From NCBI GenBank assembly GCA_001179505.1, contig CDMY01000584.1:1-47204 (forward strand): a DNA stretch of 47,204 nucleotides. The letters run 5' to 3'. The stretch comes from Vitrella brassicaformis CCMP3155 (Eukaryota; Protista; Chromerida). Below, one piece after another: positions 5,031 to 46,226 of the stretch. The notes beneath the pieces were generated by a model. The model was not told the origin of the DNA, did not search any database, and was given only the letters and a program-made list of their open reading frames with translations. Numbering within the stretch: position 1 is the stretch's first letter; the number at the start of each line of letters is the position of its first letter. Both the position numbers and the translations under genes were made by a program.

Positions 5031-5960
5031 TCACACGGACAAGAATGTGCGACCGAAGACGGCGACACTCTGAGCCTTGCTGCAGTAGGCAGGGGCGTCG
5101 TTGCCGAGTGACGAACACACGGCGCGCTCCAGATTCTGCTCGTTCTCCTCAGAGTGCTTGCCTGCATCCACACAAAAAGAGGAGAAGGTATCTTCAAGCT
5201 GCACGGCTCGGGGGCCAGCTGTGTGTATCCTCTCGTGGTGCATACCATTGATAACGACGTAAGGGACGTATGTGTGTGGTGGCTTGAGTGCCTCTGTCGC
5301 CTTGGCTGCCCCCTGCATCAGATGGGTCCCCTCGCCGTCTTTGGTGCACGTCTCGATGGCGGATCTCTCCCCCGTGTCGACGCACTGCGCCCAGTCCTGC
5401 GGAAGGTCCTTCTCGATGCAGGCGATGGCAGCGAGGGACTTCTTGGAGTAATGCAAGATGCAGCCCTGCACCACGAGACACAACTAACAACATTGCCATC
5501 CAGCGGGCGCTCTTTCGGCTTGCCTGTATTGTATTGAGTGCGCATTCGGCCTCGCCGTGCTGGCACTGAGTTGAAAGTGGGAACAACCATCTACGTTTTT
5601 CTGGCTTCGCTCGGCTCACCTTGAAGTGTTTGCCGTCGGTCTTTGCATTGCCGTATGGAAACATTGTGAGAGAAACGAAGGGACGCAGAGGCGACTCCAT
5701 CAAAGGCACCTGCGAGAGAGAAGAAAACACATAAACCATCCATTGCAGTCTTCTCAACGGCGGGAGGATGCACTCACGAGGCTCATCTCGATGAATTTGG
5801 CCGAGAACGGGCACAGGCTTTCGTAGTAGACCTCTACTGACACTTGCGAAGCGGCGTGCACAAGGTGGGACTCGCGGAGATCTGCCAGCAGACGCCCATC
5901 GATGTGGTCCAGGGCAGCTGTGCAGATGACCAGCAGGAAGAAGAACGCTCGTGCATCCAT
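5031..5960 (-). CDS. IFI30: GILT (gamma-interferon-inducible lysosomal thiol reductase) family protein
   Basis: Signal peptide, VEVYYESLCPFS (CxxS), FPYGNA, signature CQHGEAECALN, and HTYVPYVVING. Confidence 0.9.
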
Positions 5961-6179
5961 TTTTCGCTGCTTGAGGGCTTTGCGGTAAGGCAATTTACAT
6001 CATGATGTTCAAGCTCGCAGCGATGCAGGTTCCCAGGTTCTGTCATACCTATTGACCTGCTAGCGGTATTTGCCTTCACTGAAACAGTGCCCTTTTCTGC
6101 GCAGATCTGACCATCCTCGTAGCAGGTGTCCGCTTCAGCGAGATGAGGTCTGTGAAGCACAAGGTGAGGCGCAAGATGA

Positions 6180-7355
6180 ATGTGCACGTCTATGAGCAGA
6201 GCACCGACAGGGCCAAACGACTCATCAGGTGCGCCACAGCAGACAGCCAGGCACAGTAGAAGAAGATCTTACACGCGCTGCAGGAATGACATTATGGGCG
6301 TCCGCAACACGTTCGCCAACACATTCGCTTACAGCACAGAGATGAAGGAGCGACTCATGAGCAACATCACGCGGCTCCTCAAGATGGAGTACGGCAAGTG
6401 CGGCCACTTCTCCGACACATCAAGCGCCTCCGAGAGCGACAATGACGACCCATCTTTATCATCTGGAGGGCGTCGGAGTGACACCCCTCGCGGCCGCTAC
6501 AAGGAGCTGCCTGTGTGCTCTGCTTACTGGCCCATCGGATCTGAGTTCGACGCGCGGCACATCCTCACCTTCCTGGACAGCAGGGGCTATCGGTGTGGGC
6601 TGCCGGTGGTGGAGCAGAAGGAGGCCAGCCTCATCTTCAGGGCATGGACGCCGGGCATGCGACTCGTCAAGGGAAAGGTGGGTGAGCACACACAATCAGT
6701 CTCCCTGAGATCCCAATCAGTCGCTGTTGGCTGCGTGTGTGTGTGCGTGCAGCATCAGGTTCCCATTCCTCCCGCTGAGCGTGCAGCAGAGGTGCTGCCC
6801 GACCTTGTGTTCGTCCCCCTGTTGGCGTTCGACCGAACCGGCTTTCGAGTGGGCTATGGCGGGGGCTATTACGACCGCACCCTCAAGCACCTTCGGGAGC
6901 GGTGGATGAAGCGCATGAGCGGCGAGACCCTCCCCGAGTCCCTGCTGCCGGTCTTCTTCAACAGACCCTATGAAGGGTCCGGCCGCACCCCCTCCATCAT
7001 CATGCAGCGACTGCAGCAGCTGGGCCCGCGAGCCGCCAACCTGCCCATCGACGACCTGCAGCGGCAGAGGCCCGAGGACGTGATGCCTGTGGTGGCGTGT
7101 GGCGTGGCGTTCAGCTGCCAGGAGGTGAGGGAGGTGCCTGTGGAGGACCATGACGAACGGCTTGAGTACATCTTGACTGAGGAGGAGTTGGTGGTGTGCC
7201 ACGACAGGGAGAGCCGGCTGATGGCCAGGGAGGGCAAGGTGGGGGTGCTGGCAGATGAGGGGAGTGAGGTGGGCAGGACGGGCGTCCTCCTCAAGGAGGG
7301 TGGGAAGAAGAGGGTCCGCCTGCCAATCAGGCCGGCATTTTCTGTGCCCTACTGA
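6180..7355 (+). CDS. MTHFS: 5-formyltetrahydrofolate cyclo-ligase (methenyl-THF synthetase)
   Basis: YWPIGSEF, LPVV, PDLVFVPLLAFDRTGFRVGYGGGYYDRTL and VPVEDHDERLEYILTE; one in-frame intron near 6679-6751. Confidence 0.92.
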   Translation: MCTSMSRAPTGPNDSSGAPQQTARHSRRRSYTRCRNDIMGVRNTFANTFAYSTEMKERLMSNITRLLKMEYGKCGHFSDTSSASESDNDDPSLSSGGRRSDTPRGRYKELPVCSAYWPIGSEFDARHILTFLDSRGYRCGLPVVEQKEASLIFRAWTPGMRLVKGKVGEHTQSVSLRSQSVAVGCVCVCVQHQVPIPPAERAAEVLPDLVFVPLLAFDRTGFRVGYGGGYYDRTLKHLRERWMKRMSGETLPESLLPVFFNRPYEGSGRTPSIIMQRLQQLGPRAANLPIDDLQRQRPEDVMPVVACGVAFSCQEVREVPVEDHDERLEYILTEEELVVCHDRESRLMAREGKVGVLADEGSEVGRTGVLLKEGGKKRVRLPIRPAFSVPY

Positions 7356-9102: not shown

Positions 9103-12100
9103 ATGCCGCCGGCGCTCCACGATAGTGGAGGCGGCCTTCAGGGGTCCATGTTCGCCGGCTTTGCGTCGTCGCCCCGTTCCTCTCCCTCTCACCCACCACC
9201 GCTCCCCGACCAGCGCGTCACGGTTGCCGACATTCTGCCTCGCCGCATCGCATTCGTCAAACTCGGTTCGACCTCTGCGGCAGGAGGGCAGCTGCAGACC
9301 AAGGCGGCCGCGGGGAGTGCGGGCGCCACGTCGATGCAGACGAGTGACGACTGCGACATTTTCGACCCGCCGATAGAGCTGTCGAAGGAGAGCGATATGC
9401 CGAATCGCAAGTGGGAGCGTCCCCTGCCGCCGGCGAGGGGTCTGTTCAACGAGCGCAACGACTGCTACCTCAACGCGACGGTGCAGGCGCTGGCGCACGC
9501 CCCCCCGCTGGTCAACCACATGCTCAAGGGCAAGCACCGGGCCACCTGCCACCGACGGCAGCGCCGCCTCCACTGCACCCTCTGTGTCTTCGAGGCCACG
9601 GTGCAGGAGGCTTACCGGGGCACGAGCACCTCATTCGATGCCGTCCGCCTCAAGCATGCCATCCGGCCCGTCTGGGCGCCCATTCGGTACGCTAGGCAGG
9701 CGGACGCCCACGAATTCATCCGGGTGCTGGTGGAGACGTTCCACTCGTCGTGCGAGCCCCTGACGGACGGCAAGCCGCAGCTGCGGCGGCTGCTGCTGCG
9801 GCAGAACGTGCAGGCGACCAGCTGGATATCTCGGCTGTTCGGGGGCTGGCTAAGGTCGACCATCGAGTGCAAGACTTGTGGATACGAGTCCAACACGTAC
9901 GACTTCTTCCTCGACCTGTCGCTGGAACTGGAAGGTATGTGAGCGCTGGGTAGGAGGGATGGAGGGAGGGAGGGAGAGCTGTGGGAGATATGGATGGTCT
10001 GTTGTGTGCTGCGTGGTATTTGCAGCTGGTATTTCGAGTTTGCCTGGGGCGTTCAAGCACTTCACGGCCAAGGAGAGGCTCTGCAACCAAAACAAATACA
10101 AGTGAGCCAGCATCAATCACATGCAGAGCAGAGCAGCCGCATCACACGTCGGTCTGCCTGTGGATGTGTGTGTTGGTGTATGTGTCAGTTGTCCCGAGTG
10201 CGGCCACAAGGTACCGTTGGCCGAGAAGCGCATCCTGCTGCACCGGTGCCCGGAGCTGCTCACCCTCACCCTCAAGAGGTACGCCGCCCACCCCCCCACC
10301 CACCCACCAACCACCCCCCTACATACAATACACATCGACTGACTGACACCCACCGATCCATCCATTCATTCAGATATCCCAATCTGCCGGTCAGGTTCGC
10401 CCCCCGTTGGCAGATGACGTCATGGAGCCGTCGGCACTTCACCAGCCACAAGAACGGCAAGGCCATCCAGTTCCCCGCACACCTCGACCTCAAGGACTTC
10501 ACCACCAACGAAGCCAGAGGAGAACCCCCAAAGCAGAGACGCACAGCCACCCAGCAGCCACAGCCACAACCACAGCCACAGCCACAGCCGCAGGCCAACC
10601 CATCTTCGCCTGTGGCTGGGTCTGCGTCTGCCGTGGGCGGTGGTGCGGTGCCGTCCGGAGTGCGTTCGTCGCCCCACTGTCGGTACAACCTGTGGGCGAT
10701 GGTCTCTCATCGGGGGTGGACGGCCAACTCGGGGCACTACGTGACGTATGCCAAGGCCGCCAATGGCAACTGGTACTGCTTCGACGATGCCAAAGTCTAT
10801 CTGGTGAGCAAGGGAGAGGGGGGACAGGCACACACATATGGGTGAGGCAGGCCTTGTCGAGTTGTGTGTGAATGGACCTTACGCATGTACGTCTGTATGT
10901 ATGTATGTGTGTGTGTTGGCGTCAGGTGAGCGAGAGGACGGTGTTGAGTTGCATGTGCGAGGCCTACATCCTCTTCTACCAGCAGGAGGCGCCATACCCA
11001 CCAAAGGACAAGCAGCAGCAGGACCCGCAGCCATCCCCACCACCAGCTGCTGACACCTCCCCCGCCGCGCCACATGTCCCCTCCCCGCCCCCCGCCGCTA
11101 CCCCCACTCCTCCCTCGTCGGCCATGACCATCGATCTCACGGCTGACGACGAGGCGCCGCCATGCACCAAGGGCGGGCAAGAGAAGGAGACGGAGGCGGC
11201 GAAGGAGGGCGACAAGGCCGCCGCCCCGCAGCCGCGAGAGGAGAAGATGGCCGAGGCCACCGCTGAGGCGGCACCGTCTGTAGGGCAGAAGCGGAAGCTC
11301 GATGAGGGTGGCGACACTGGAGGCGAGGAGGGGGAGGGAGAGGGGCTGGGCGCGCTGGAGCGATCTGTTCGCCAGGCGCGCCTTAATGGTGCCAAGGAGG
11401 CGGCTGCCGACCAGCTGGCGTTGGTGCCCTTTGGCAAGCTCGACGAGGGCGTGGGGGAGGCCAAGGAGGAGGAGATGGGGGTCGCGCCGGGCAGGGAGAA
11501 AGGCAAGAAGAGTGTGGGTCGGCCGTGGGCCGACATGAGCATTGCGGAGAGGCGTCGGCGCTTCAACCATCTGGCGAGCCGCCACGCGTCGCTGCTGATG
11601 CCCACCACCACATGCGGGCGCAAGATGAGACGACAACTCATACTCACGGTCAGACACACGGATGGGCAGCACACGACTAGGTGGGCTTCATATTTGTCAT
11701 GTTTGTGTTATCCTTTGGTGTGTGCAGAATGCTCATTTCCGTTGGGCGTGTCGGTTTCTGCGCAAGGTGCGTGGAGCCGATCACGATGCGGCGGCCACGT
11801 GCCGCGACCTGGGCCTCCTGGTGACTGAGCGAACTGAGGTAGGCACAGAGGCGGGGAGGGAGGGAGGGAGACACACGCACCACCAGAGCGACAGATGACG
11901 GCTCTTATATATGGTTGTTTGCTCAGGTGGCTGAGGGGCGGGGCTACCCCGCTGGTGCTGGTGCTAGTGGTATTGAGGATGCGGTTGGTCGACTGGCGGA
12001 CGGCCAGCTGCCCATATGTGGCAAGACGGAGGCCAACGAGGAGGGGGAGGTCAAGGGCGACGCTGAGATGGATGTCAAGGCGGACCATCAACACCACAAG

Positions 12101-12891
12101 ATGGAGGAGGAAAAGGAACACAAGTAGGCGACGCCACAACCACACGCCATGACCAGCTGACGCACACCGGGAGTGTGTGTGCGTCTGTGTGTGTGTCAGG
12201 TTGGTTGAGGCGACGAGCCAGGAGAAGGAGTGTGTTTTGGCGCCCTTCTCCCCTGAGGCACGTCGACAACAGGTACCACCACATACACCACCAGCTCAAC
12301 ACAGACACTGACACGCCGCATCTGATCGTCTCCCCTTGACCGCATTCAGGCTCGTTCGCTCATCCAGCAGTTCGGCACAGCCAACGGTAAATGCACTCAG
12401 GCAGGCAGTCGGGCACGTGCTCTCTCCATCTTCATGTGTGTGTGCAGTGGATACATGGGAGGGTCTGCCTCCACCCTCCGACTATGTGGCGGCCCAGGCG
12501 CAGCAGCAGCCACCCATCCAGGAGCGGTCGCAGGAGGACAAGGAGTACGACAAAGGCAAACTCAAGAAGGACAAGAAGAACAAACACACCACCACACACA
12601 TCAAGACCGATGCACACACAGACACAGGTCAGCCACAACACACAGAGAGACAAAGAGGCGCACCACGGGGGCAACGGTCGTGTGCACATGTGTGTGTGTT
12701 GGTGTGCAGGTGACGGTTTGCCAGTGGTGGTCAACGCGTCCGCCTTCGATGCCGTGCTCGAGGGCCGGAAGCACGGTGCCTTACACCACCACAACCACCA
12801 CAAGCACCATGGGCGCGATTCACAGAAGCGTCGCGTCAAGAAGGACAACAAGTTTTTGAAGAAGGGCAAGGCGGGCGGGGGGTTTCAATGA
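9103..12891 (+). CDS. USP36: Ubiquitin-specific protease, USP36/USP42-like (multi-exon)
   Basis: Cys box GLFNERNDCYLNATVQAL, QADAHEF, CKTC/CPEC zinc fingers, His box SHRGWTANSGHYVTYAK..WYCFDD. The C-terminal QFGTANVDTW and EYDKGKLKK segments resemble the USP36 tail. Confidence 0.88.
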
Positions 12892-21038: not shown

Positions 21039-24000
21039 TTAAAAGAGGAAGAGGATGGCCGCAGCCGCGAGAGCGAGTGGCGTGACGAACGAGGCGCCCG
21101 TGGTGAAGGCCGCATTCTTCTTCTTCTTCGGGGTTGCCTGAGGGAATAAGACAAGACAAGGCAGGAGTAAAGCAACGAAGAGGTGGTGAGGTGGTTGCTC
21201 ATTCATTCAGCTAGCCAAGTTATATGCCTACCCCTTGGCCCTCGCTGGGCAGATCGTCGGGGTCTGTCATGGCGGAGAGGTCTCCACTGATGATTTCGTC
21301 GAGGTTGGGTGTGTTGTCAAAGGCCATCGCGAAGGCGTTGTCGAGGTCGCCGGACGACTCAGCCACCATGATGGCCACGTCCAGGCCGTCGTCGGTCGCG
21401 CCGTTCGTCATGACGACAGTCTTCACCTCAACGCTAGGATTGTCCTGCACAGACAGACAGACAGACAGACACAGGCAGGCACAGGGGTCGGAGTACACAG
21501 AAGACAACACGCGCACCGCCCTCCCGCCCTTCCCGCACACTGACTCACCTGGAGTTCGCGCAGGACGAGGTCGCGTGTGCGGAAGAGGCGTCGGAGACGG
21601 CCAGTGCCGGCGCACCTTGCGGATGCTCGGCAGGTGCCCAGGCTGTAGCTGTCAACGCAAAACGTGAAGTCGCCTGGTAGATTGAACGAAGAAAGGAAAG
21701 GAGACGACGAGACACAAAGCGACATGGATGCGGTGTGCGCGTGCGTGCCGTGAGGCTTTTTCGCTTACAGGCATCGCAGGCGATGCTCTTTTGCATGCCC
21801 GTCAGCAGCTGTGCGGCCAGCGCCTACGAAAGCGCCCAGATGCGTGTGTGTGTGTGTATGTGTATGCGTGTGCGTGTGCGTTTATCTGTCCTTTATCTGT
21901 GTCGCTGGCTGCCCGGCTCACCTTGGTGACGTCGCACTTGGTGGGGTCGGTCATGTTGGCCTTGCTGATGCCGTTGATGGTCGTCCTGATCTCATAGCGG
22001 CGGGGCTGCGTCAGGGCTGCTGTGCACTGGGCGTTCGACGTCAAAAGCTGTCGGCAAACAGAAAATCAAATCAGTCACACCAAACGAATGCACGTGAGCG
22101 CTCAATGGATAGATGGACTGCTCGGCTTTTCTCACCGCATCGCAATTGCCGTTGGGTTCCTCCACTGCCTCCTGCAAGCCGTCGCACACATGCACACATT
22201 CTTCCTTCCTTCCGTCCGCTCTCCCCCCTCCTCGCTCAGCTCACTCACTCCTTGACTAAGTGACGTACCGGCAGTGGCGGATCCTCAACCTCTGGAACTT
22301 CTGGCGCGGGGGAGGTCGAAGCATCAGTGCCATCATCATCGGCACCGGGTGTGGTGCTGCTGCCGTCGCCAGTGCCACCGTCGCCACCGTCGCCACCGTC
22401 GCCACCGTCGCCACCGTCGCCACCGTCGCCACCGTCGCCAGAAGAGGGCGTGGGTGAGGTGCTCTCGTCTTCACCACCGTCGCCACCGTCGCCACCGTCG
22501 CCAGAAGAGGGCGTGGGTGAGGTGCTCTCGTCTTCACCACCGTCGCCACCGTCGCCAGAAGAGGGCGTGGGTGAGGTGCTCTCGTCTTCACCACCAGTGC
22601 CGGGATCCTCGCTGGTGCTGGGCTCCTCGCTGGTGCTGGGCTCCTCGCTGGTGCTGGGCTCCTCGCTGGTGCTGGGGTCCTCCGTCGAGCTCGACGCGGG
22701 GTCAAGCCGACGCAGCTCAGCGCCGTCGAAGTCCTCGTACTCGACGTCGATCTCAACTTCACGAAGCTCACGAAGCTCGCGACGGAAACCTCCGTACGTG
22801 CGCTGCTTCTCTGTGCAGAGGCACGCAGACAGACAGACAGACAGACGGACATGAGAAACAGAAATCAGGATCGATTCGCGCTGAGAAGGGTGCTTCGCTG
22901 TGCTGTGGCGTGGTGCGCTTACCGTAGAAGGACTGGTAGAAGAGGGCGCCACAGCAGCTGTAATTCCCCGGGGCGATCTGGATGTACAGAGTGTCGCAGT
23001 CCGGACTCTGCTGAGTGTCTGCAGAAGGCAAGAGCATCCACGGACACCAGCGATGTTTCATATGCAGCACCATCCGTGGCATGCCATTTGCTCACAGATG
23101 TCAAGGCCTTGGCGATTGGGCAGCCTTCCGAATCCCATGTCACCCTGCAGGCAGGCAGAGAGACACAAGAAGCCGGTCAGTCAGCCCCCCGCCCACCCCA
23201 CCCATGCACCCGTCCATTCATCCATCTACCTACCGGGCTATCGCCGGGCAGGGTGTTCAGCTCAGAGGGGTCCTTTGGCTGAAGCTCCCGGAACTCGGCA
23301 TCGTCCTCCTCGAGCTCACGACGGGCTGCTCCGGTGGGCAGCTCGGTGGTCGAAGAGACTTCTTCCTCGGCCGCGGCGGTCGTCGACATTTCTTCCTCGG
23401 CCGCGGCGGTCGTCGACATTTCTTCCTCGGCCGCGGCGGTCGTCGACATTTCTTCCTCGGCCGAGGCGGTAGTCGAGACGGACACGCCACAAGCCTCCGG
23501 TTGCGTGACTGGAGTGGCATCTCCGCCGGGGAGAAGGTCCGCGAACTGTACACACGCAGAAAAGGGGGAAGCGAAGTGTGTGTGAGTGAGTTGTGTCGTC
23601 GCGCTTTAGTGCATGTGTGAGGTCGCCTTACGTTGTTCCAGCAGTACGTGTCGCCAGACTGCAGGACGAAGGAACAACGAAGCAACACCACACAATTCTC
23701 TCCCCTTTCTGTGTTGTTGTTGTCCGTGCCTGTCTGTCTGTGTTGGGGTGGAGGTCTGTGTTGCTTGTGGTACCACTTACCTTGGAGCACAGCATCTTCA
23801 TGTAGTTGTCGCCCCTACGGCGATCGTCACCGGAACCCAATGAGTTGAGAAGCAGGCCAGTGTTGGTGAAGAAGCACCGGTCGGTGCACACCTGCTCGGG
23901 CTTGCCATAGCTCTCCACTTCGGCCAACGCTCCTGACAGCCACAGACAGGAAGAAAGAGGGGAGGAGATGGAAGGGAGATGCGTACCACTGTGGGTCATG

Positions 24001-29060: not shown

Positions 29061-30064
29061 CTATCCCCTCATCAGCCGGTGTGTCCGTTGCGTGTATGGG
29101 GGTGTGGAGGGGCCGTGCTTGGGATACTCCGGCGAGGCAGGATCAATGGGCCCCCAGGGCATCTTGTAGTGTCGGAACACCTTGAGGTCGATTTGCCATG
29201 GCGTCCCTATCCAGAAGGGCCAGTCCTCATGATCCCTCACCGCACACTGCAGATACAAGACACACAGAATGTGCACGGCAGGCCGCCTCCCGCACGCATG
29301 GTTCTCTCTGCGCTTCTTACCCCGCTGTTGGGGTGGATGAGCACATCGTATATCCTGACACACACGAAGAGGCAATCACGAGGCATCCAGCCAGGTCACG
29401 TTTGCTTGCAGAGCTGTGTGCAGCCCGTACCCTCTATGCTGCGATATCCACTGTGCGAGCGGCGCAAAGTCTTCCAGCTGTCGGCACCAGCAACAGGAGG
29501 ATGACAGCCAACACATGAAAACATACAGACAGACATGAGCCAATGCGCGTCTGTGTTAAGGTGAGGGAGCTCACATGGACATAGATGGCCCATTGCCCGA
29601 CGAGGAACGGTCCGGCGGGAGAGTAGTCGGTCTCGAAGTAGCACGTGGTGTTCTGATGGAACAATGAGGTGCAGTGGTTGGTGATGTTGAAGTGCGTCAC
29701 CAGCCGCTCCTTCAGCCTCTCGGCGCCCTTCGTGTGCTCTTCGTTGTTCTGCAGGCACCAACACACACACACACACACACACAAAACAAACACACAGAGA
29801 CAGACAGACAGACACACAAGACAGACAGAAAAGAAACACCGTCAAGTGCAATGAAGCAGTCCAATTATTGGTCCTTCTGACCTGCCAGAACATTGTGTGG
29901 ATGTGGTACGAGTGGTAGGGGATGCTCTCCAGCTGGGCCTCGGTCTGTGCATCCTCACATAGGACACTGCCGTCTGCGCGTCGAGGCGGTGGATAAAGTG
30001 ACGGGTGTGCGGCCGCCTCTCGATAGAGGAGCACCGCCGCCAACAAGCCTATGAAGAACTTCAT
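29061..30064 (-). CDS. Secreted DOPA 4,5-dioxygenase family protein (fungal/bacterial DODA type, 5 exons)
   Basis: Signal MKFFIGLLAAVLLYREAAA; SYHIHTMF, AGPFLVGQWAIYV and spliced LEDFAPLAQWISQHRG|IYDVLIHPNSG|CAVRDHEDWPFWIG match the family's YHIH, GP, IHPxxG and DH..WxG motifs. Confidence 0.82.
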
Positions 30065-30405
30065 TTCCAGCCGAAAGACTCAAGCAGATCTGAACACACA
30101 CAAAGGAGCACCGGTTTGATTCATGAGATGAGTCTACGTGTGGACACATGCTTACAGCAAGACCACGGCAGCTCCCTTCTCCCTCTTGCTCTCTTCACGC
30201 TTTTGCGAGCTTGCTTTGCGAGCTAAGCTTCTAGTTTCCAGCCGAAAGACTCAAGCAGATCTGAACACACACAAAGGAGCACCGGTTTGATTCATGAGAT
30301 GAGTCTACGTGTGGACACATGCTTACAGCAAGACCACGGCAGCTCCCTTCTCCCTCTTGCTCTCTTCACGCTTTTGCGAGCTTGCTTTGCGAGCTAAGCT
30401 TCTAG
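30064..30405. repeat. Perfect 171-bp tandem duplication abutting the DODA start codon
   Basis: Units 30064-30234 and 30235-30405 appear identical by eye. Confidence 0.92.
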
Positions 30406-39539: not shown

Positions 39540-39904
39540 AAACCGGCCCGAGCAAAGCAAACCAACGGACAAACCTTTCTATGGAGGGTCAATGAGCGAT
39601 GGAGAGCAAAGCGAAGCAGAGCAAAGCCCTCTCTGTGCTGAAAGCGCTAAGCGAAAAGTTGGGGGCATGCCGAGAGGGTCCCACGACAAAGCCAAGCAAA
39701 GCTCGCCAAAGCCCAGCAAAACTCGAAAGCCACAAACCTTCGCAAATTTACCTGGCCCCACGGGGCCCAGTGCCCCAGACAAGCAAAGCCAAGCCAAGCC
39801 AAAGCAAGGCTCAAGGTGAAGGACAGGAGACGGAGGAAGGGGAAACAATCAATGCAAAGCAAAGCAATGCAAAGCGAGTCTCAAGGTGAAGGACAGGAGA
39901 CGGA
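39540..39904. repeat. Degenerate AAAGC/AAGCC-rich repeat with a 70-bp tandem unit; continues at 45482-45590 on the far side of the insertion
   Basis: tcaaggtgaaggacaggagacgga at 39811 and 39881; ggggaaacaatcaatgcaaagcaaagc at 39839 and 45489 in the same orientation. Confidence 0.85.
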
Positions 39905-40848
39905 CGCATGGGGGCGTTCCCTATCGAAGAATAGGGGGTCTCGTGGACCCGCTCGGGTGTGTGTGCATCTGGACCGGTCTGAGACGGGCTGCAACGCAGT
40001 GTCAAAATTTTCGGCCCGCAGTCTCATGCGGGCGAGAAATGGGTTAGAGAAGACATAAACAAACTGTTTTCTCCACAGCGAGCGACCGGACAAGGGCAAG
40101 TCTGATACCATGTGAACCGGCATGGTGTGCTGATCAACATGGGGGTCACGGCATCCCCTCACGCCTTCACCATCGAGAATTCTCCCGAGACCGACTGACA
40201 AGGGGAGATCCACCGCGCCACACAGAGGGCGCGTGAGCACAAGCTGAGTCGGCCATTCGAGAGCCACCGACAGCCACTCTCAACCNNNNNNNNNNNNNNN
40301 NNNNNNNNNNNNNNNNNNNNNNNNNNNNNNNNNNNNNNNNNNNNNNNNNNNNNNNNNNNNNNNNNNNNNNNNNNNNNNNNNNNNNNNNNNNNNNNNNNNN
40401 NNNNNNNNNNNNNNNNNNNNNNNNNNNNNNNNNNNNNNNNNNNNNNNNNNNNNNNNNNNNNNNNNNNNNNNNNNNNNNNNNNNNNNNNNNNNNNNNNNNN
40501 NNNNNNNNNNNNNNNNNNNNNNNNNNNNNNNNNNNNNNNNNNNNNNNNNNNNNNNNNNNNNNNNNNNNNNNNNNNNNNNNNNNNNTCACAGCATCGCAGC
40601 CTGATCCGTGCTCCCTCGTGTCAGGTACACGCCGAGGGCGGCGGGGAAAACACATCTAAACATTAATGCACGCATACCCACATATGTACACATACGTATA
40701 CACATGTGTACCTTTCTGCCGCTTGTCTGGTGTGTATGCCCGTTCAGATGGCCCGTTGCACTGCCTGAAGGCCTCCCCGCCTCTCTCTTCGTCCGCCAGC
40801 CCCCCTCCCCTCTCCCTCTCCACCACCCCACACACCAGCGACACCCTC

Positions 40849-42703
40849 ATGATGATGGACGCGACAGAGTATGTGATGATTCCGCAAGGAGGCAGGAAAC
40901 AGGCCCGGTAAGCGGAGATCCCCTCTCGTCTCATCGATGACCTCAACAAACAGAGGCCCACGTCCAGCCGGGAGACCACCAAGAGCTGGATAGAGGGCGG
41001 ATGGACCGCGCTCAGCCGGGCCGGCCTTGTGGGGTGGGTCAAGCGCCACTGGTGCGTGTATGAGCCTTTTTTCCCGACCAAGCCCACCGGCGACCGCACT
41101 GTTGTCACTCAACCACGACGAATGCCCGCAGATTTGGTCGACGAGCTGGTGGATGTCGCTGACAAGAGGGTCAAGGTCCTCCAGGATGACGACAGCGCCG
41201 ACGGCGACGCCGACGAGGACCAGCCGGCCAGCCAGGCGTCGGATGCGTCATCGATCGCTGAGCCGGACCGTCTGGAGAAGGACGAGATACGGCACAGGGT
41301 CCTCATGGCCCTCGAGAAAGACTTCCCCTTTCGCCCTTTGTCGCAGCTGAAGCTCTCGTCTCACCTCCAGAAAGAGGTCGGGCGCTTCCAGAAATGGATC
41401 CCCAGTATATCCGTCGCTGGTCGCAACTTCCAGGTGGGTGAGGGCGAGGGAGGCAGAGAGACACCTGGACGCTGCTACATATGTGCTCATGTGTTGCTTC
41501 AGGCGCCGTTTCCTCTTCCCCCGCTGCCGCCGCCACCACCAGGACCCCTCCACAGTCGACGGCTCTCCCGCCACCCACTGTTCGACCGCCTCGTCCTCAG
41601 CTGCCCCCTTCTGCCGCAGCAGCTGCTGCCCCGGCCGGCCCACCACGCAACGCAGAGGGTCTTGAGGAGCACGATTTCTCCTCCCCACCTCCGTCACCTG
41701 CCTCCCCACCACCGGGCGCGCCGCTCCCCCGAGCGATGACGAATTCGATGAATTCGACGCTGGCAGCGTTGTGCCTGAGGACGATGCCTCCGTGCAGGAC
41801 GACGACATGGACGCCGCCGATGAAGAGCCTGCTCTGGCTGATGACCTGGATACGGCAGACGACGAGCAACAGCTGCCTCTGCAGGGGGAGGATGGGATGT
41901 CGCACATCACATCCGGCAAATTCGAGGTCGTCCGTCGCATCGAGGAGGGGAGAGACGACAGGAACACGGGCATCTGGGTGACTGAGATACTCGAAAAGAG
42001 GGAGTACAGAGGAGCGGTGGCAGGGCTCCATGTGACTGCCGTACAGCTGCGGGTGACGACCTCGCCAAGCTGCTGACCGGCTGGCCGGAGATAGTGACCC
42101 ACACGTGGGCAGTCGACGTGCCCGTTGACCATCCCTCGCCGAGAGTCAGCATCCCTCTCAGCATCTCTGCCGATGGTGCTCAACTGCTGCGCGGCGTCGC
42201 CAACTCATCGGTAAGCTAAGCACACAGAAGCAATTCATTCACTGCTCTCATTACGAACATTATTCATCCATTCTTTCTTCCTTTCTTTCTTTCAGGCTGT
42301 CACCTTTGGGATGAGAGCCGTCACCAATCACCTGCCAGGCGATCGACATCCAGTGTGGTCATCCCAGTCACGAGGTGCCTTGCCGTCTGACCTTCAATGT
42401 GTCGTTCCTCGGTGACCAGGTCAGCAGCCACACGCGATGTACGGCAAGACGAACTGCTTCATTCGCTTGCTTGTTTGCTTCACTTCTTTGCTTGTTTGCT
42501 TCACTTGTTTTTGTGTTTGCTTCACCTGTATTGCAGAAGTTCATTCTCTGTATCCCTGGGATGGGCGGTGCCGGTCTGAAGACGTGCTGCTCGCTCATGG
42601 CAGCCACTTCGTCACCTGGCTCAACCACATGGACGAATTCATGGATGCCATCGACGAGCCAGCAAATGGACCCGTGCGCCTGGCCTTCATGACATTTGAG
42701 TGA
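40849..42703 (+). pseudogene. Degenerate spliced ORF starting inside the left TIR, unknown function
   Basis: MMMDATEY..|PTSSRETTKSWIEGGW..GRNFQ| then Pro-rich and acidic segments that need frame changes near 41700 and 42050; last exon ..GPVRLAFMTFE*. Confidence 0.5.
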
Positions 42704-42838
42704 GAAGGGGGGAACACACAGACAATCACACGTATGTGCATGCATGTGTGTGTGTGTTGCTTGATGTGGCTGTTATGCAGCTGGATAATGAGCTGTGCGT
42801 TGCGTTCCAAGGCGCCCACACGCGGCGATGAATAGTGC

Positions 42839-44241
42839 TCAATCATCTGTGACTCTTTATCCATCCGCTGGTGTGACTGACTGTTTATTCGTTCCATGAG
42901 ACTCTTCATTCATTCAATGACTGTCAATAGCCACGAAGCCAGTCAATCGTATATGTACATGAATGCGATCAACGAGTGAGAAACACAAGCAAACATGCAA
43001 AATACTCACCCCAGACCCTCCACTCCCTCTTCCATGTATGCCATCTCCGCCGCATTGAGCTCCATTGCCGCCTGTGCGGCATAGAAGAGTGGCACCTCCT
43101 CTGCTGCCTGTGGGTCGTCCTCGAGGTCTCCCCCGTGCTGATGCGCGGCCTGCCCCTCAAGCAGTGCGGGTGCGTCAGCAGCGGGCACAGCAGCACCCTC
43201 AGCGGGCTGTGGGTGGGCGGCGGGCACAGCAGCACCAGCAGCGGCCGGTGGGTGAGCCGGAGGGGCGTGCGGCTGGAGGGGTCGAGTCGTGACTGACGTG
43301 AACTTGAAGATCGCCTCGCAGATGTGCGCTGGGCCGACCCGCAGCGGCGACAGCTTGAAGTACACGGGCGTGTCTTCGTCCACCTTGACGGAATTCTGAA
43401 GGCGCGTAAGCAGAGAAAGACAGATTGGTGTGTCATTCCCCCCTTATTTCATCTCTCACCTTCTGTGTGTTGCCTTCGATTGTTCTGTGCTGGCGCCCCT
43501 CGAAGCACAGACTGCTGCCCAGCAAACGCTCCAGACTGGCCCTCGCCCCATCCCCCCTCACAGCGACGACCGACCACACAGGCGTCCGCTCCACCAGCTC
43601 GTCCTCCCCCAGCATGGCCCGGCGGGTGGGCGAACGGCCCTCGGCGGTCAGCTTCGTGGGGCTGAAGTGCCGCTCCACCCTCGGCGTGGGGGACTTGGGC
43701 TCGAGTGCGTCACCAGCCGTCTGGGTCCGCTGGTACAGCCACTGCACAGCCTCGACTGCCGTGTGAGCGCTGCATGTGCCCGTCGCCCTGGCCCAGTAAC
43801 CGTCTGTGGTGATGCCGTCGTGGCTCTTGGAGGGGCGGATGACGACAATGGGCGGAGGGGAAGGGTTGTGCTGGGCAAGGAAGCGGAACATCGACCCCTC
43901 CAGCGACCGAAAGACGGCATACATTTCTCGAAGAATGCGGTACTGGTCGGGCTGGTTGGACGATTCTGCGTCGCTGAGTGCTGCCTCCCACCCCTCGCCG
44001 AGCACGCCACCCTCCATGCAGAAGTCGAGGCTGCCCACGGACGTCACCCCGTATGTCTTCTTGTTGGAAGTCGGGGGAATCGTGACGGGGTCGATGGCGG
44101 CGAACTGGCGACTTCGTGCAGGACCATCCTTGAACCCCTTCAGCCCCTCCGCTGGTTGCGCGTCCGCTTGGCGAGAGGCCCAGTGATCTCCTCGCTGTCA
44201 CCATCGCCCTCGTGGCCAACGGCATCCACGTCCATCATCAT
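42839..44241 (-). pseudogene. Degenerate spliced ORF starting inside the right TIR, unknown function
   Basis: MMMDVDAVG.. stops after 33 codons. A shifted frame is open about 250 codons (..SLDFCMEGGVLGEGW..NTQK), followed by phase-compatible exons NSVKVDEDTPVYFKL..EGL and DD*. Confidence 0.5.
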
Positions 44242-45888
44242 GAGGGTGTCGCTGGTGTGTGGGGTGGTGGAGAGGGAGAGGGGAGGGGGGCTGGCGGACG
44301 AAGAGAGAGGCGGGAGGCCTTCAGGCAGTGCAACGGGCCATCTGAACGGGCATACACACCAGACAAGCGGCAGAAAGGTACACATGTGTATACGTATGTG
44401 TACATATGTGGGTATGCGTGCATTAATGTTTAGATGTGTTTTCCCCGCCGCCCTCGGCGTGTACCTGACACGAGGGNNNNNNNNNNNNNNNNNNNNNNNN
44501 NNNNNNNNNNNNNNNNNNNNNNNNNNNNNNNNNNNNNNNNNNNNNNNNNNNNNNNNNNNNNNNNNNNNNNNNNNNNNNNNNNNNNNNNNNNNNNNNNNNN
44601 NNNNNNNNNNNNNNNNNNNNNNNNNNNNNNNNNNNNNNNNNNNNNNNNNNNNNNNNNNNNNNNNNNNNNNNNNNNNNNNNNNNNNNNNNNNNNNNNNNNN
44701 NNNNNNNNNNNNNNNNNNNNNNNNNNNNNNNNNNNNNNNNNNNNNNNNNNNNNNNNNNNNNNNNNNNNNNNNNNNNGGTGATTCTTGCATGATTCGACAG
44801 CTCATGCAGAGGCGGTCTGCATGCAGGTAACGCCAAGTGCCTCGCCCTTCTGCAAGAAGAGAAACAGGAGGGTAAGTGATTGCCCCATACAGATTTCCCG
44901 TGTTTTCGTGTGTGATGGTGTCAGCTTTCCCTGCGTGTTGGTGCTCACCGTGTGCGGCACTCGACGGTGGTCACTGTGATGTGGTAGGATCGGGGCAGGG
45001 GCCCTCGGATGGCCGTCAGGTTGATGGGTGCGTTCTCGCGGGATGGGACTCGGCTGTTTCAGAGGTGAGATCGGGCCGGGCAGGGATGGGACCTATGAGT
45101 GGTTGAGAGTGGCTGTCGGTGGCTCTCGAATGGCCGACTCAGCTTGTGCTCACGCGCCCTCTGTGTGGCGCGGTGGATCTCCCCTTGTCAGTCGGTCTCG
45201 GGAGAATTCTCGATGGTGAAGGCGTGAGGGGATGCCGTGACCCCCATGTTGATCAGCACACCATGCCGGTTCACATGGTATCAGACTTGCCCTTGTCCGG
45301 TCGCTCGCTGTGGAGAAAACAGTTTGTTTATGTCTTCTCTAACCCATTTCTCGCCCGCATGAGACTGCGGGCCGAAAATTTTGACACTGCGTTGCAGCCC
45401 GTCTCAGACCGGTCCAGATGCACACACACCCGAGCGGGTCCACGAGACCGCCTATTCTTCGATAGGGGACGCCCCCATGCGGGAGGGAGGGGAAACAATC
45501 AATGCAAAGCAAAGCAAAGCACAGCCAAAGCCAAACCAAAGGTGACGAGGGAGGGGTGACAAGGAAAGCAAAGCAAAGCAAAGTCAAGAGGGACAAGGGA
45601 GCTGAGAGAGGTCAAACGACATCAGGAGCTCCATAAGAACATCCGGAACTAGACGGCACAGCCACGACAAGAGCCCCAGGGGGAAGACCGCACGCATGAT
45701 GCAATTGCCGCCGGGGCGAGTGTATAATGGAGCGGAACAAAGATCTTCAGTGCAAAGGCGGTTCACATATGTGGTTCGTAGCAATCCACCCACTCGCTCG
45801 GGGGAAGGAAGAGAGATCTGCACGCCTGAGCCCGCAATGCAAGCTCGCAAGGTCCCTCTTGCTCTATCTCCATCCCTTGCGAGCGAGC

Positions 45889-46226
45889 GCCCCCCCCCCC
45901 CCCCCCCCNNNNNNNNNNNNNNNNNNNNNNNNNNNNNNNNNNNNNNNNNNNNNNNNNNNNNNNNNNNNNNNNNNNNNNNNNNNNNNNNNNNNNNNNNNNN
46001 NNNNNNNNNNNNNNNNNNNNNNNNNNNNNNNNNNNNNNNNNNNNNNNNNNNNNNNNNNNNNNNNNNNNNNNNNNNNNNNNNNNNNNNNNNNNNNNNNNNN
46101 NNNNNNNNNNNNNNNNNNNNNNNNNNNNNNNNNNNNNNNNNNNNNNNNNNNNNNNNNNNNNNNNNNNNNNNNNNNNNNNNNNNNNNNNNNNNNNNNNNNN
46201 NNNNNNNNCCCCCCCCCCCCCCCCCC
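45889..46226. other. Assembly gap (300 N) flanked by poly-C tracts; further 300-N gaps at about 40286-40585 and 44477-44776
   Basis: Runs of N and C seen directly. Confidence 0.95.

What the first reader, a model, noticed from the sequence alone, without database searches (positions are those of the whole stretch)
39905..45481. Candidate new family of giant-TIR (foldback-like) element with 3-bp TSD
Seen: inverted arms of about 0.96 kb and 1.25 kb (each with a 300-N gap) differ by only a few substitutions and one 1-nt indel in the comparable parts. They enclose a 3.37-kb core, with termini CGCATGGGGGCG and TSD GGA. Known: MULE/foldback elements have long TIRs but 9-11-bp TSDs; CACTA elements have 3-bp TSDs but CACTA/G ends; PIF/Harbinger duplicate TAA/TTA. 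This combination fits none of them as I know them, and I see no DDE transposase motif. Near-identical arms imply recent activity or gene conversion.
Basis: partly seen in the sequence, partly recalled or inferred. Interest (0 to 1): 0.85.

Follow-up and report, generated by a model that had tools for sequence, protein, structure and literature searches.

The report
Decayed long-armed jumping gene in Vitrella
This is a real but broken copy of a rare jumping gene of the alga Vitrella brassicaformis, and it is the one copy I could examine that shows both ends of the element and the 3-letter footprint it leaves on insertion.

Summary
The window is the whole contig CDMY01000584.1 of Vitrella brassicaformis CCMP3155. 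Arms 39905-40861 and 44229-45481 differ by 2 substitutions and one 1-nt indel over 630 comparable bases. GGA flanks both ends. The host DNA is a 70-bp repeat array whose intact units show that exactly 3 bp were duplicated.

The two N gaps only hide arm sequence. Each arm is really about 0.98-1.09 kb.

It is not a singleton. At least three other Vitrella contigs share the layout: near-identical inverted arms ending at the start codons of two convergent genes.
- One gene is a conserved orphan, "gene B".
- The other, "gene A", is about 1,150 aa in CDMY01000945.1. It carries D...D-x19-CxxC...HxxxxH...E with RAG1-like spacing, which is the CACTA/Chapaev/Transib (CMCT) signature. No Pfam, PDB or atlas search supports this statistically.

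In the window gene A is a stop-ridden, internally deleted remnant and gene B is frameshifted, so this copy is non-autonomous.

It is a giant-TIR element with a 3-bp TSD, but it is not foldback-like and probably lies inside the CMCT supergroup.

The scan had already flagged relatives on other DNA (s1-199300, s1-221641, s1-231283). This copy adds the termini and the TSD.

The parts
39579..39904 (.). Left flank: about 70-bp satellite-like repeat units (CAAAGC-rich). The unit 39832-39901 is intact and serves as a paralogous 'empty site'.
39902..39904 (.). Left copy of the 3-bp target-site duplication, GGA
   Evidence: a complete unit end CAGGAGAC followed by an extra GGA
39905..40861 (+). Left inverted arm (terminus CGCATGGGGGCG). 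It ends with ATGATGATGGACG, the shared start codons. It contains the assembly gap 40286-40585.
   Evidence: DNA contigs bridge 39904/39905 and reach 30 nt across 40861/40862.
40286..40585 (.). Assembly gap inside the left arm. It hides the reverse complement of 44777-45100 (324 nt) plus about 100 nt more.
40850..42835 (+). Gene A remnant, a decayed transposase-like gene.
- In-frame TAA at 40909-40911.
- The frame changes near 41666-41739 and near 41986-42073.
- In-frame TGA at 42413-42415.
- RNA-supported exons: 41328-41430, 41500-42210, 42296-42416, 42534-42699, 42781-42933.
- It keeps the N-terminal domain and the first-aspartate (SADG) region.
- It lacks the second aspartate, CxxC, HxxxxH and E.
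   Evidence: N-terminus, E = 1e-15 to the L004 gene; E = 7e-5, z = 7.2
42836..43005 (.). Region where the 3' ends of the two convergent transcripts meet. 42957 is the sharp end of homology with the one-armed copy in L001. A DNA contig of twice the single-copy depth (X1, 42957-43236) also begins there.
43006..44251 (-). Gene B, the orphan partner gene. The annotated product P0001 is encoded at 43006-44017, with an intron at 43396-43459. A 19-nt deletion near 44145, relative to L001, puts the conserved N-terminal 80 or so residues out of frame with the ATG at 44251.
44229..45481 (-). Right inverted arm, which is the promoter and spliced 5' leader of gene B. The RNA contig starts at 45313 and has a leader intron at 44850-44948. 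The arm contains the assembly gap 44477-44776.
44477..44776 (.). Assembly gap inside the right arm. It hides the reverse complement of 40586-40612 (27 nt) plus about 100 nt in the assembled strain.
45482..45484 (.). Right copy of the 3-bp target-site duplication, GGA. It is also the first three bases of a complete repeat unit.
45482..45610 (.). Right flank: continuation of the same 64-70-bp repeat array

Best explanation
The 5.6-kb stretch is a non-autonomous, decayed copy of a low-copy cut-and-paste DNA transposon family of Vitrella brassicaformis.

**Family plan.** Two near-identical inverted arms, hundreds of bp to about 1 kb long, carry the element's ends. Each arm also serves as promoter and spliced 5' leader for one of two genes that point inward and converge:
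- a long gene A, the presumed transposase;
- a conserved partner of unknown function, gene B.

**Shown**
- The arms.
- The 3-bp duplication of GGA in a satellite unit.
- Transcription and splicing of the arm-to-gene-B leader.
- The same architecture in three other contigs.
- The homology of both genes to their counterparts there.
- The lesions in both genes of this copy.

**Inferred**
- The long gene A product of CDMY01000945.1 is a DDE transposase of the CACTA/Chapaev/Transib/RAG1 (CMCT) type, read from its D236, D331-x19-C350xxC353, H546xxxxH551, E555/E558 arrangement.
- It cuts at the CGCATGGGGG termini and makes 3-bp staggered target cuts.
- This copy could move only if an intact relative supplied the enzyme.
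- The arms stay identical through gene conversion between them or through a recent insertion.
For: - **Arms and termini:**
- **TSD against the neighbouring repeat unit:**
- **Three of the four junctions present in contigs of two DNA runs; exact-arm depth 25.5 against 11-14 for the core:**
- **Leader transcription.** RNA contig 45313->43016 has introns 44850-44948 and 43396-43459. In the sister element L009, the spliced contig L010 (two leader segments removed) carries the leader at both ends.
- **Family.** Exhaustive HMMER with gene B finds 8 relatives at 31-99% identity; all five whose contigs could be looked up are encoded in Vitrella.
- **Same architecture elsewhere:**
  - L003: inverted repeat 2604-2752 / 5686-5834 (99%).
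  - L004: inverted repeat 1-286 / 5950-6243.
  - L009: inverted repeat 9720-10000 / 12471-12751 (100%).
  - Each has a gene-B homologue starting within 12 nt of the arm's inner end, and a convergent gene-A homologue.
- **Gene A homology:** window N-terminus to L004, E = 1e-15; catalytic-region remnant E = 7e-5, z = 7.2.
- **The 712-aa product of L004** was rebuilt exactly to the annotated length, and its motifs were read from it. E547, N550 and H551 are invariant in three subfamilies.
[quoted passage not shown] RAG1 has D600, D708, C727/C730, H937/H942 and E962, which gives the same D-x19-CxxC and HxxxxH spacing (PMC4914335).
- **Internally deleted derivatives** that keep the arms and gene B (window, L003, L009) are the usual pattern of non-autonomous DNA transposons.
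Against: - No statistical homology to any transposase: Pfam is blank on every exon, PDB sequences are blank, the atlas is blank, and the single-sequence model is too poor to search (pLDDT 38.5).
- Only this one copy has both termini assembled, so the 3-bp TSD rests on a single insertion in a GGA-rich repeat.
- Copy number is very low, and no empty allele or insertion polymorphism was seen.
- The arms are unrelated in sequence between subfamilies, so no conserved terminal motif can be shown.
- Copies L001, L005 and L006 lack an inverted partner.
- Even the longest gene A (L004) is split into 433-aa and 712-aa frames.
- RNA coverage of 40862-41290 is nil in X9, so leader use by gene A in this copy is not shown.
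Confidence: 0.72

Rival explanations
1. This is a resident, non-mobile gene module. A host gene pair has a shared promoter and leader that was duplicated in inverted orientation and is kept identical by gene conversion. The family members are old dispersed paralogues, not transposon copies.
For: - The arms are exactly the 5' leader of gene B and end at its start codon in every copy.
- The arms differ completely between subfamilies whose proteins are only 30-50% identical.
- Copy number is very low, and no transposase family is statistically recognised.
Against: - The whole 5.6 kb interrupts a repeat unit with a 3-nt excess.
- The inverted repeat stops at the same base where homology with L001 stops.
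- Copies sit in unrelated gene neighbourhoods.
- Gene A shows independent internal deletions and stops in different copies while the arms are kept.
- The motif arrangement of the long copy is that of CMCT transposases.
Confidence: 0.12
2. Two independent one-armed units lie tail to tail. On this reading arm+gene B (as in L001) and arm+gene A are separate mobile or duplicated units that happen to meet at 42956/42957.
For: - L001 holds arm+gene B alone, with sharp ends at the arm terminus and at the equivalent of 42957.
- An X1 DNA contig of twice the single-copy depth (42957-43236) begins at 42957. A gene-B form with a 515-bp deletion, as in L001, is also present in X1.
Against: - Three other family members show the two-armed, two-gene layout, so that layout is the norm.
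- The flanking repeat unit is restored by removing the whole 5.6 kb with one 3-bp duplication.
- There is no homology or shared end motif between the two halves beyond the arms.
Confidence: 0.1
3. Scaffolding artefact: a single arm was placed twice around unrelated sequence.
For: - Both arms contain N gaps.
- No read or contig spans an arm.
- Every other family member is also broken by gaps or contig ends inside its arms.
Against: - The left outer junction and both inner junctions exist in contigs of two DNA runs. The right outer junction is not among the pieces shown.
- Arm depth is twice core depth.
- An RNA contig runs from the right arm into gene B.
- The arms differ at three positions.
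- The same layout recurs in independent contigs, and in L010 the leader is present at both ends.
Confidence: 0.03

Closest known systems
CMCT supergroup (CACTA/EnSpm, Mirage, Chapaev, Transib, Plavaka, RAG1), as defined in Kojima 2025 (PMC12730594)
   Same: - 3-bp TSD, the EnSpm value (PlavakaB makes 2-3 bp).
- The sister element's long protein has D...D, then CxxC 19 residues after the second D, then HxxxxH shortly before conserved E residues. That is the C(2)C / H(3-4)H signature, with RAG1-like spacing.
   Different: - Termini are CGCATGGGGG...CCCCCATGCG, not CACTA/CAC..GTG.
- TIRs are about 1 kb, against tens of bp.
- There is no HMMER-level similarity to Pfam transposase families.
- There is a second, convergent orphan gene.
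Transib / ProtoRAG (RAG1-like and RAG2-like genes between TIRs; layout, 5-bp TSD and heptamer ends recalled from memory)
   Same: A RAG1-type motif arrangement in the long gene, and a convergent partner gene enclosed by inverted repeats.
   Different: - TSD is 3 bp, not 5 bp.
- There is no RSS-like CACAATG/CACTATG heptamer at the ends.
- The partner (gene B) model has a mixed alpha/beta fold with no beta-propeller and no RAG2 match.
- The host is an alveolate alga.
MuDR of maize (Mutator superfamily)
   Same: Two convergently transcribed genes, a transposase and a helper of unknown function. Promoters and transcription starts lie inside long TIRs of about 215 bp (PMC3440606). Internally deleted non-autonomous derivatives keep the TIRs.
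   Different: - Mutator elements make 9-11-bp TSDs (finding text; established knowledge). Here the TSD is 3 bp.
- There is no MULE or SWIM signature.
- The arms are 4-5 times longer and include a spliced leader and the start codons.
Foldback elements
   Same: Very long inverted termini relative to element size.
   Different: Foldback arms are built from tandem subrepeats, and the elements make about 9-bp TSDs (established knowledge). Here the arms are unique sequence without tandem repeats and the TSD is 3 bp.

Membership tests
CMCT supergroup (CACTA/EnSpm-Mirage-Chapaev-Transib) | [quoted passage not shown] | tested here: inconclusive
   Present by inspection in the 712-aa product of the sister element (D236, D331, C350/C353, H546/H551, E555/E558), with partial conservation in three subfamilies. 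Absent from the window's own remnant. There is no statistical or structural confirmation.
CMCT supergroup (CACTA/EnSpm-Mirage-Chapaev-Transib) | Detectable sequence similarity of the transposase to family profiles | tested here: not met
   Pfam hmmscan of every exon-sized piece of the window gene and of the L004 gene gave no transposase family at E <= 1-10. PDB phmmer found no RAG1 or Transib. Only pieces could be searched, so a full-length profile search remains to be done.
CMCT supergroup (CACTA/EnSpm-Mirage-Chapaev-Transib) | Short TSD (EnSpm 3 bp; PlavakaB 2-3 bp) | tested here: met
   GGA is duplicated, confirmed against the neighbouring intact repeat unit. This is one insertion only.
CACTA/EnSpm proper | Termini 5'-CAC(TA)...GTG-3' | tested here: not met
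   Termini are CGCATGGGGGCG / CGCCCCCATGCG.
Transib / ProtoRAG | 5-bp TSD and RSS-like heptamer termini | tested here: not met
   The TSD is 3 bp and the termini do not match a CACAATG-type heptamer. The family features are recalled from memory.
Transib / ProtoRAG | RAG2-like (kelch beta-propeller) partner gene | tested here: not met
   The gene B family model (pLDDT 63.6, pTM 0.59) is mixed alpha/beta without a propeller. Foldseek against PDB and the AFDB clusters gave no hit with TM above 0.35.
MuDR / Mutator | Long TIRs holding the promoters of two convergent genes | tested here: met
   The RNA contig starts inside the right arm and runs into gene B. The spliced leader is present at both ends of the sister element's transcript contig. 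The genes converge.
MuDR / Mutator | 9-11-bp TSD and MURA-type (MULE/SWIM) transposase | tested here: not met
   The TSD is 3 bp. No MULE, DBD_Tnp_Mut or SWIM hit was found.
Foldback | Arms composed of tandem subrepeats | tested here: not met
   TRF finds no array inside either arm, and the repeat finder finds no internal direct repeats.
PIF/Harbinger | TWA 3-bp TSD and DDE_Tnp_4 transposase with a Myb-like partner | tested here: not met
   The TSD is GGA, and no such Pfam hit was found in either gene.

The most novel reading that the evidence does not exclude
This copy defines the ends and the 3-bp footprint of an undescribed alveolate lineage of RAG1/Transib-CACTA-type transposons. In this lineage, kilobase inverted arms would double as spliced twin leaders for a convergent transposase and partner gene pair, a ProtoRAG/MuDR-like layout arrived at in a protist. 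The partner protein family has no known relatives.
Probability: 0.5. Interest if true: 0.7.

Novelty: new variant of a known kind. Interest (0 to 1): 0.55.

Why it matters
Vitrella is a free-living relative of apicomplexan parasites and carries few transposons: 1.5 Mb of TEs in a 72.7-Mb genome (PMC4501334). I found no published description of its DNA transposons.

If gene A is a RAG1/CACTA-type enzyme, the family would do three things:
- extend that enzyme group to alveolates;
- show a two-gene, convergent, TIR-promoted layout arising outside plants (MuDR) and animals (ProtoRAG);
- supply a new conserved partner protein to study.

This decayed copy is the only one I could examine with both termini in the assembly. 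It therefore gives the terminal sequence and TSD length needed to find and classify the rest.

It is also a practical warning. Every member I looked at is broken by gaps or contig ends inside its arms, so short-read assemblies under-represent the family.

Tried and rejected
- **Pfam** on all ORFs and exons of the window genes and of the L004 and L003 genes found nothing. Two earlier attempts failed because of stop codons in the coordinates.
- **Rfam** on the element found nothing.
- **Word-indexed protein search.** With gene A's N-terminus it found only its own product. With the L004 exon-2 region it found nothing, which was a wasted search.
- **ESM Atlas** with gene B, a gene A piece and the L004 C-terminal piece gave no hit above chance.
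- **PDB sequence search** with three L004 pieces and the gene B profile found nothing relevant.
- **AF2 of the gene B family** gave a moderate model with no convincing fold match. A weak list of START/Bet v1-like hits at TM < 0.35 was rejected.
- **AF2 of L004 exon 2 alone** reached only pLDDT 38.5, so it was not searched.
- **Two JGI scans** for a spliced or unspliced transcript of the L004 gene found nothing.
- **Gene A and gene B as diverged copies of one another** (a full palindrome) was tested and rejected: there is no DNA or protein similarity between the halves.
- **Each arm as a small element with its own TIRs** was rejected: the ends show no self-complementarity.
- **Shared terminal motif** in other copies: none found.
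- **Inverted partners** in L001, L005 and L006: none found.
- **A brute-force exon search** timed out. It was replaced by a guided reconstruction that reproduces the annotated 712 aa.
- **My early memory-based reading** of 'ISADG...' as CACTA-like was kept only as an inference after the literature check.
- **Full-length 712-aa protein.** It could not be handed to any search or folding tool, because it has no reference and is too long to type.

Full report
**Where we are.** A protein search with the largest open frame of the core returned its own product. It named the source as Vitrella brassicaformis CCMP3155, and the window is the whole 47,204-bp contig CDMY01000584.1 of assembly GCA_001179505.1. 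The genome has spliceosomal introns and about 58% G+C.

**The observation.**
- The inverted arms are real. Over the 630 bases that can be compared they differ by two substitutions and one single-base indel.
- The 30-nt terminus occurs only at the two outer ends.
- The arms end inward at ...ATGATGATGGACG. Both therefore carry the same start codons, and past that point the two sides are unrelated.

**The gaps, tested first.**
- The orthologous arm in contig CDMY01000776.1 (L001) is collinear across both gaps.
- One RNA contig and one metagenome contig join 44777 directly to the reverse complement of 40586.
- DNA contigs of the assembled strain carry a further 87-92 nt there, homologous to L001 9631-9734.
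- The gaps therefore hide nothing but arm sequence. Each arm is about 0.98-1.09 kb, and the 0.96 vs 1.25 kb difference reflects only where the gaps fall.
- Contigs from two DNA runs cover the left outer junction and reach k-1 bases across both inner junctions. No listed piece spans the right outer junction.
- The exact arm has a word depth of 25.5, against 11-14 for core and flank. That means two copies in the genome, namely these two arms.
- No read spans an arm, so physical linkage is inferred.

**The target-site duplication.** The host DNA is an array of roughly 70-bp units. The left flank ends with a complete unit end (CAGGAGAC) followed by GGA. The right flank begins a complete unit (GGAGGGAGGGGAAAC, against GGAGGAAGGGGAAAC in the unit next door). 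Removing the element and one GGA restores a normal unit with one substitution. This is good evidence for a 3-bp duplication, but it rests on one insertion in a GGA-rich sequence.

**What the core holds.** Two convergent, spliced, transcribed genes.
- *Gene B* (minus strand, product P0001) is driven from the right arm. An RNA contig starts at 45313, removes a leader intron (44850-44948) and a coding intron (43396-43459), and ends at 43016.
- *Gene A* (plus strand) has RNA-supported exons from 41328 to 42933. No RNA contig covers 40862-41290, so use of the left arm as its leader is not shown here.
- Neither gene has a Pfam family.

**The turning point.** An exhaustive HMMER search with gene B found a small family at 31-99% identity. 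All five members whose contigs could be looked up are encoded in Vitrella. Three of those loci repeat the architecture:

| Locus (contig) | Inverted arms | Identity | Contents |
|---|---|---|---|
| L003 (CDMY01001026.1) | 2604-2752 / 5686-5834 | 99% | gene-B homologue and gene-A remnant, convergent |
| L004 (CDMY01000945.1) | 1-286 / 5950-6243 | 96% gapped | gene-B homologue; gene A about 1,150 aa, annotated as 433 + 712 aa |
| L009 (CDMY01000381.1) | 9720-10000 / 12471-12751 | 100% | gene-B homologue and gene-A remnant |

- In each, the gene-B homologue starts within 12 nt of the arm's inner end.
- All of these arms are cut by contig ends or N gaps.
- A 3.3-kb JGI contig (L010) that lacks two leader segments present in L009, and so is spliced, carries the L009 leader at both ends.
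- The window's gene A is homologous to the L004 gene. The N-terminal domain matches at E = 1e-15. The region around the first aspartate matches at E = 7e-5, z = 7.2 against shuffles.

**What gene A probably is.** I rebuilt the annotated 712-aa product of L004 exactly, from four GT-AG introns.
- It reads D236 (SGDGS), D331 (ATSDQ), C350-x2-C353, H546-x4-H551, E555/E558.
[quoted passage not shown] The same paper states that EnSpm makes 3-bp TSDs with CAC..GTG ends (PMC12730594).
- Mouse RAG1 has D600, D708, C727/C730, H937/H942 and E962 (PMC4914335). The D-to-CxxC distance (19 residues) and the HxxxxH spacing are the same.
- E547, N550 and H551 are invariant across three subfamilies.
- This is a motif-level inference. 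Every statistical test I could run on the exon-sized pieces was blank. The only contiguous piece I could fold gave a useless model. The full-length protein could not be passed to any tool.
- Even this longest copy has a frame break between its 433-aa and 712-aa parts.

**State of the window's copy.**
- Gene A has an in-frame TAA at 40909 inside the homologous N-terminal region, two frame changes, and an in-frame TGA at 42413.
- It also has internal deletions that remove the equivalents of residues 303-461 (second D, CxxC) and everything after residue 508 (HxxxxH, E).
- Gene B carries a 19-nt deletion relative to L001, which puts its conserved N-terminal 80 or so residues out of frame.
- The copy is therefore non-autonomous.
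- The arms are 99.5% alike although both genes are wrecked, and although the L001 copy is only 89-94% identical. This points to gene conversion between the arms, or to a recent insertion of an already defective copy. I cannot tell which.

**The one-armed copies.** L001 holds arm plus gene B only. Homology ends sharply at the arm terminus and at the equivalent of 42957, where the two genes' 3' ends meet. In run X1 the contig covering 42957-43236 begins at 42957 and has twice the single-copy depth; a gene-B form with a 515-bp deletion, as in L001, is also present there. The two-armed layout is the rule in the rest of the family, so I read these as truncated derivatives. A model of two independent units lying tail to tail is kept as a rival.

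**Gene B.** It is a real, conserved protein family with several motif blocks and an acidic tail.
- The AlphaFold model from seven sequences is moderate (pLDDT 63.6, pTM 0.59).
- The fold is mixed alpha/beta, not a beta-propeller, and it has no convincing structural neighbour.
- Its role is unknown. By analogy with mudrB, or with the second proteins of Harbinger and CACTA elements, it may be an accessory factor.

**Comparison with known kinds.**
- *How it works:* the layout is that of MuDR. Long TIRs contain the promoters of two convergent genes, a transposase and a helper (PMC3440606). From memory, it also resembles ProtoRAG.
- *Membership:* it fails Mutator (TSD, transposase), Foldback (no subrepeats), Harbinger (TSD sequence, transposase), CACTA proper (termini) and Transib/ProtoRAG (TSD length, heptamer, RAG2-like partner).
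- *Most likely placement:* a divergent lineage within the CMCT supergroup. This is not proven.

**Earlier notes of this scan.** They flagged this same stretch as a shared-leader module (s1-233347). On other DNA of this genome they flagged a 'ProtoRAG-like' two-gene element whose enzyme a follow-up agent called a very distant RAG1 relative (s1-199300; probably the L004 locus, judged only from its length of 6,243 letters). They also flagged further RAG1/CMC-like relics (s1-221641, s1-231283, s1-080122) and several inverted-leader modules (s1-248733, s1-212125, s1-235990). I reached the CMCT/RAG1 motif reading independently before seeing those notes. They agree with it, but they are not independent proof.

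**Verdict.** The feature is real. It is a decayed member of a low-copy, long-TIR, two-gene transposon family, and it contributes the family's termini and its 3-bp TSD. It is a new variant of a known kind, of moderate interest.

Noticed in passing
window 41293-41419: This 127-nt piece of gene A has a second, more highly transcribed copy elsewhere in the genome. That copy differs at 3 positions (41358, 41378, 41388) and has unrelated sequence on both sides. It shows up as loose ends in DNA runs X1/X4 and in RNA run X9.
   Followed up: partly
window 30064-30405: A 171-bp segment repeated twice head to tail at 100% identity.
   Followed up: no
window 22329-22587 and 23344-23493: Coding-type tandem repeats of 9/63 bp and of 30 bp, inside the gene region that other notes of the scan describe as Cys-rich surface proteins.
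   Followed up: no
window 45909-46208: A third 300-N assembly gap just beyond the element, flanked by C-rich runs that read as proline runs in ORFs of both strands. The whole contig end (39.5-47.2 kb) is repeat-rich and poorly assembled.
   Followed up: no
window 39905-39960 / 45426-45481: The arm terminus holds a small hairpin-forming inverted repeat, CCCCTAT(cgaaga)ATAGGGG, 14 nt from the end. One of the two arm substitutions falls in it. It is a candidate protein-binding site.
   Followed up: no
Read-laying runs X11, X13, X14 (marine sediment metagenomes): Environmental metagenomes from 2025 hold pieces of both genes and of the arms at 90-100% identity. They include an arm variant that lacks the roughly 100-nt segment present in the cultured strain's DNA. 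The RNA run X9, which carries a different organism label, has the same shorter variant.
   Followed up: partly
L003 693-1292 and 3697-4070: The sister contig carries a 29-bp satellite of about 20 copies upstream of its element. It also has a 119-nt, 99% inverted repeat inside the Gly/acidic tail of its gene-B homologue.
   Followed up: no
L001 8923-8925 and 10827-10829: The one-armed copy could be flanked by ATT on both sides if its 3' end is placed one base further out (…CATGTC). This is a possible 3-bp TSD, but it is within chance.
   Followed up: partly
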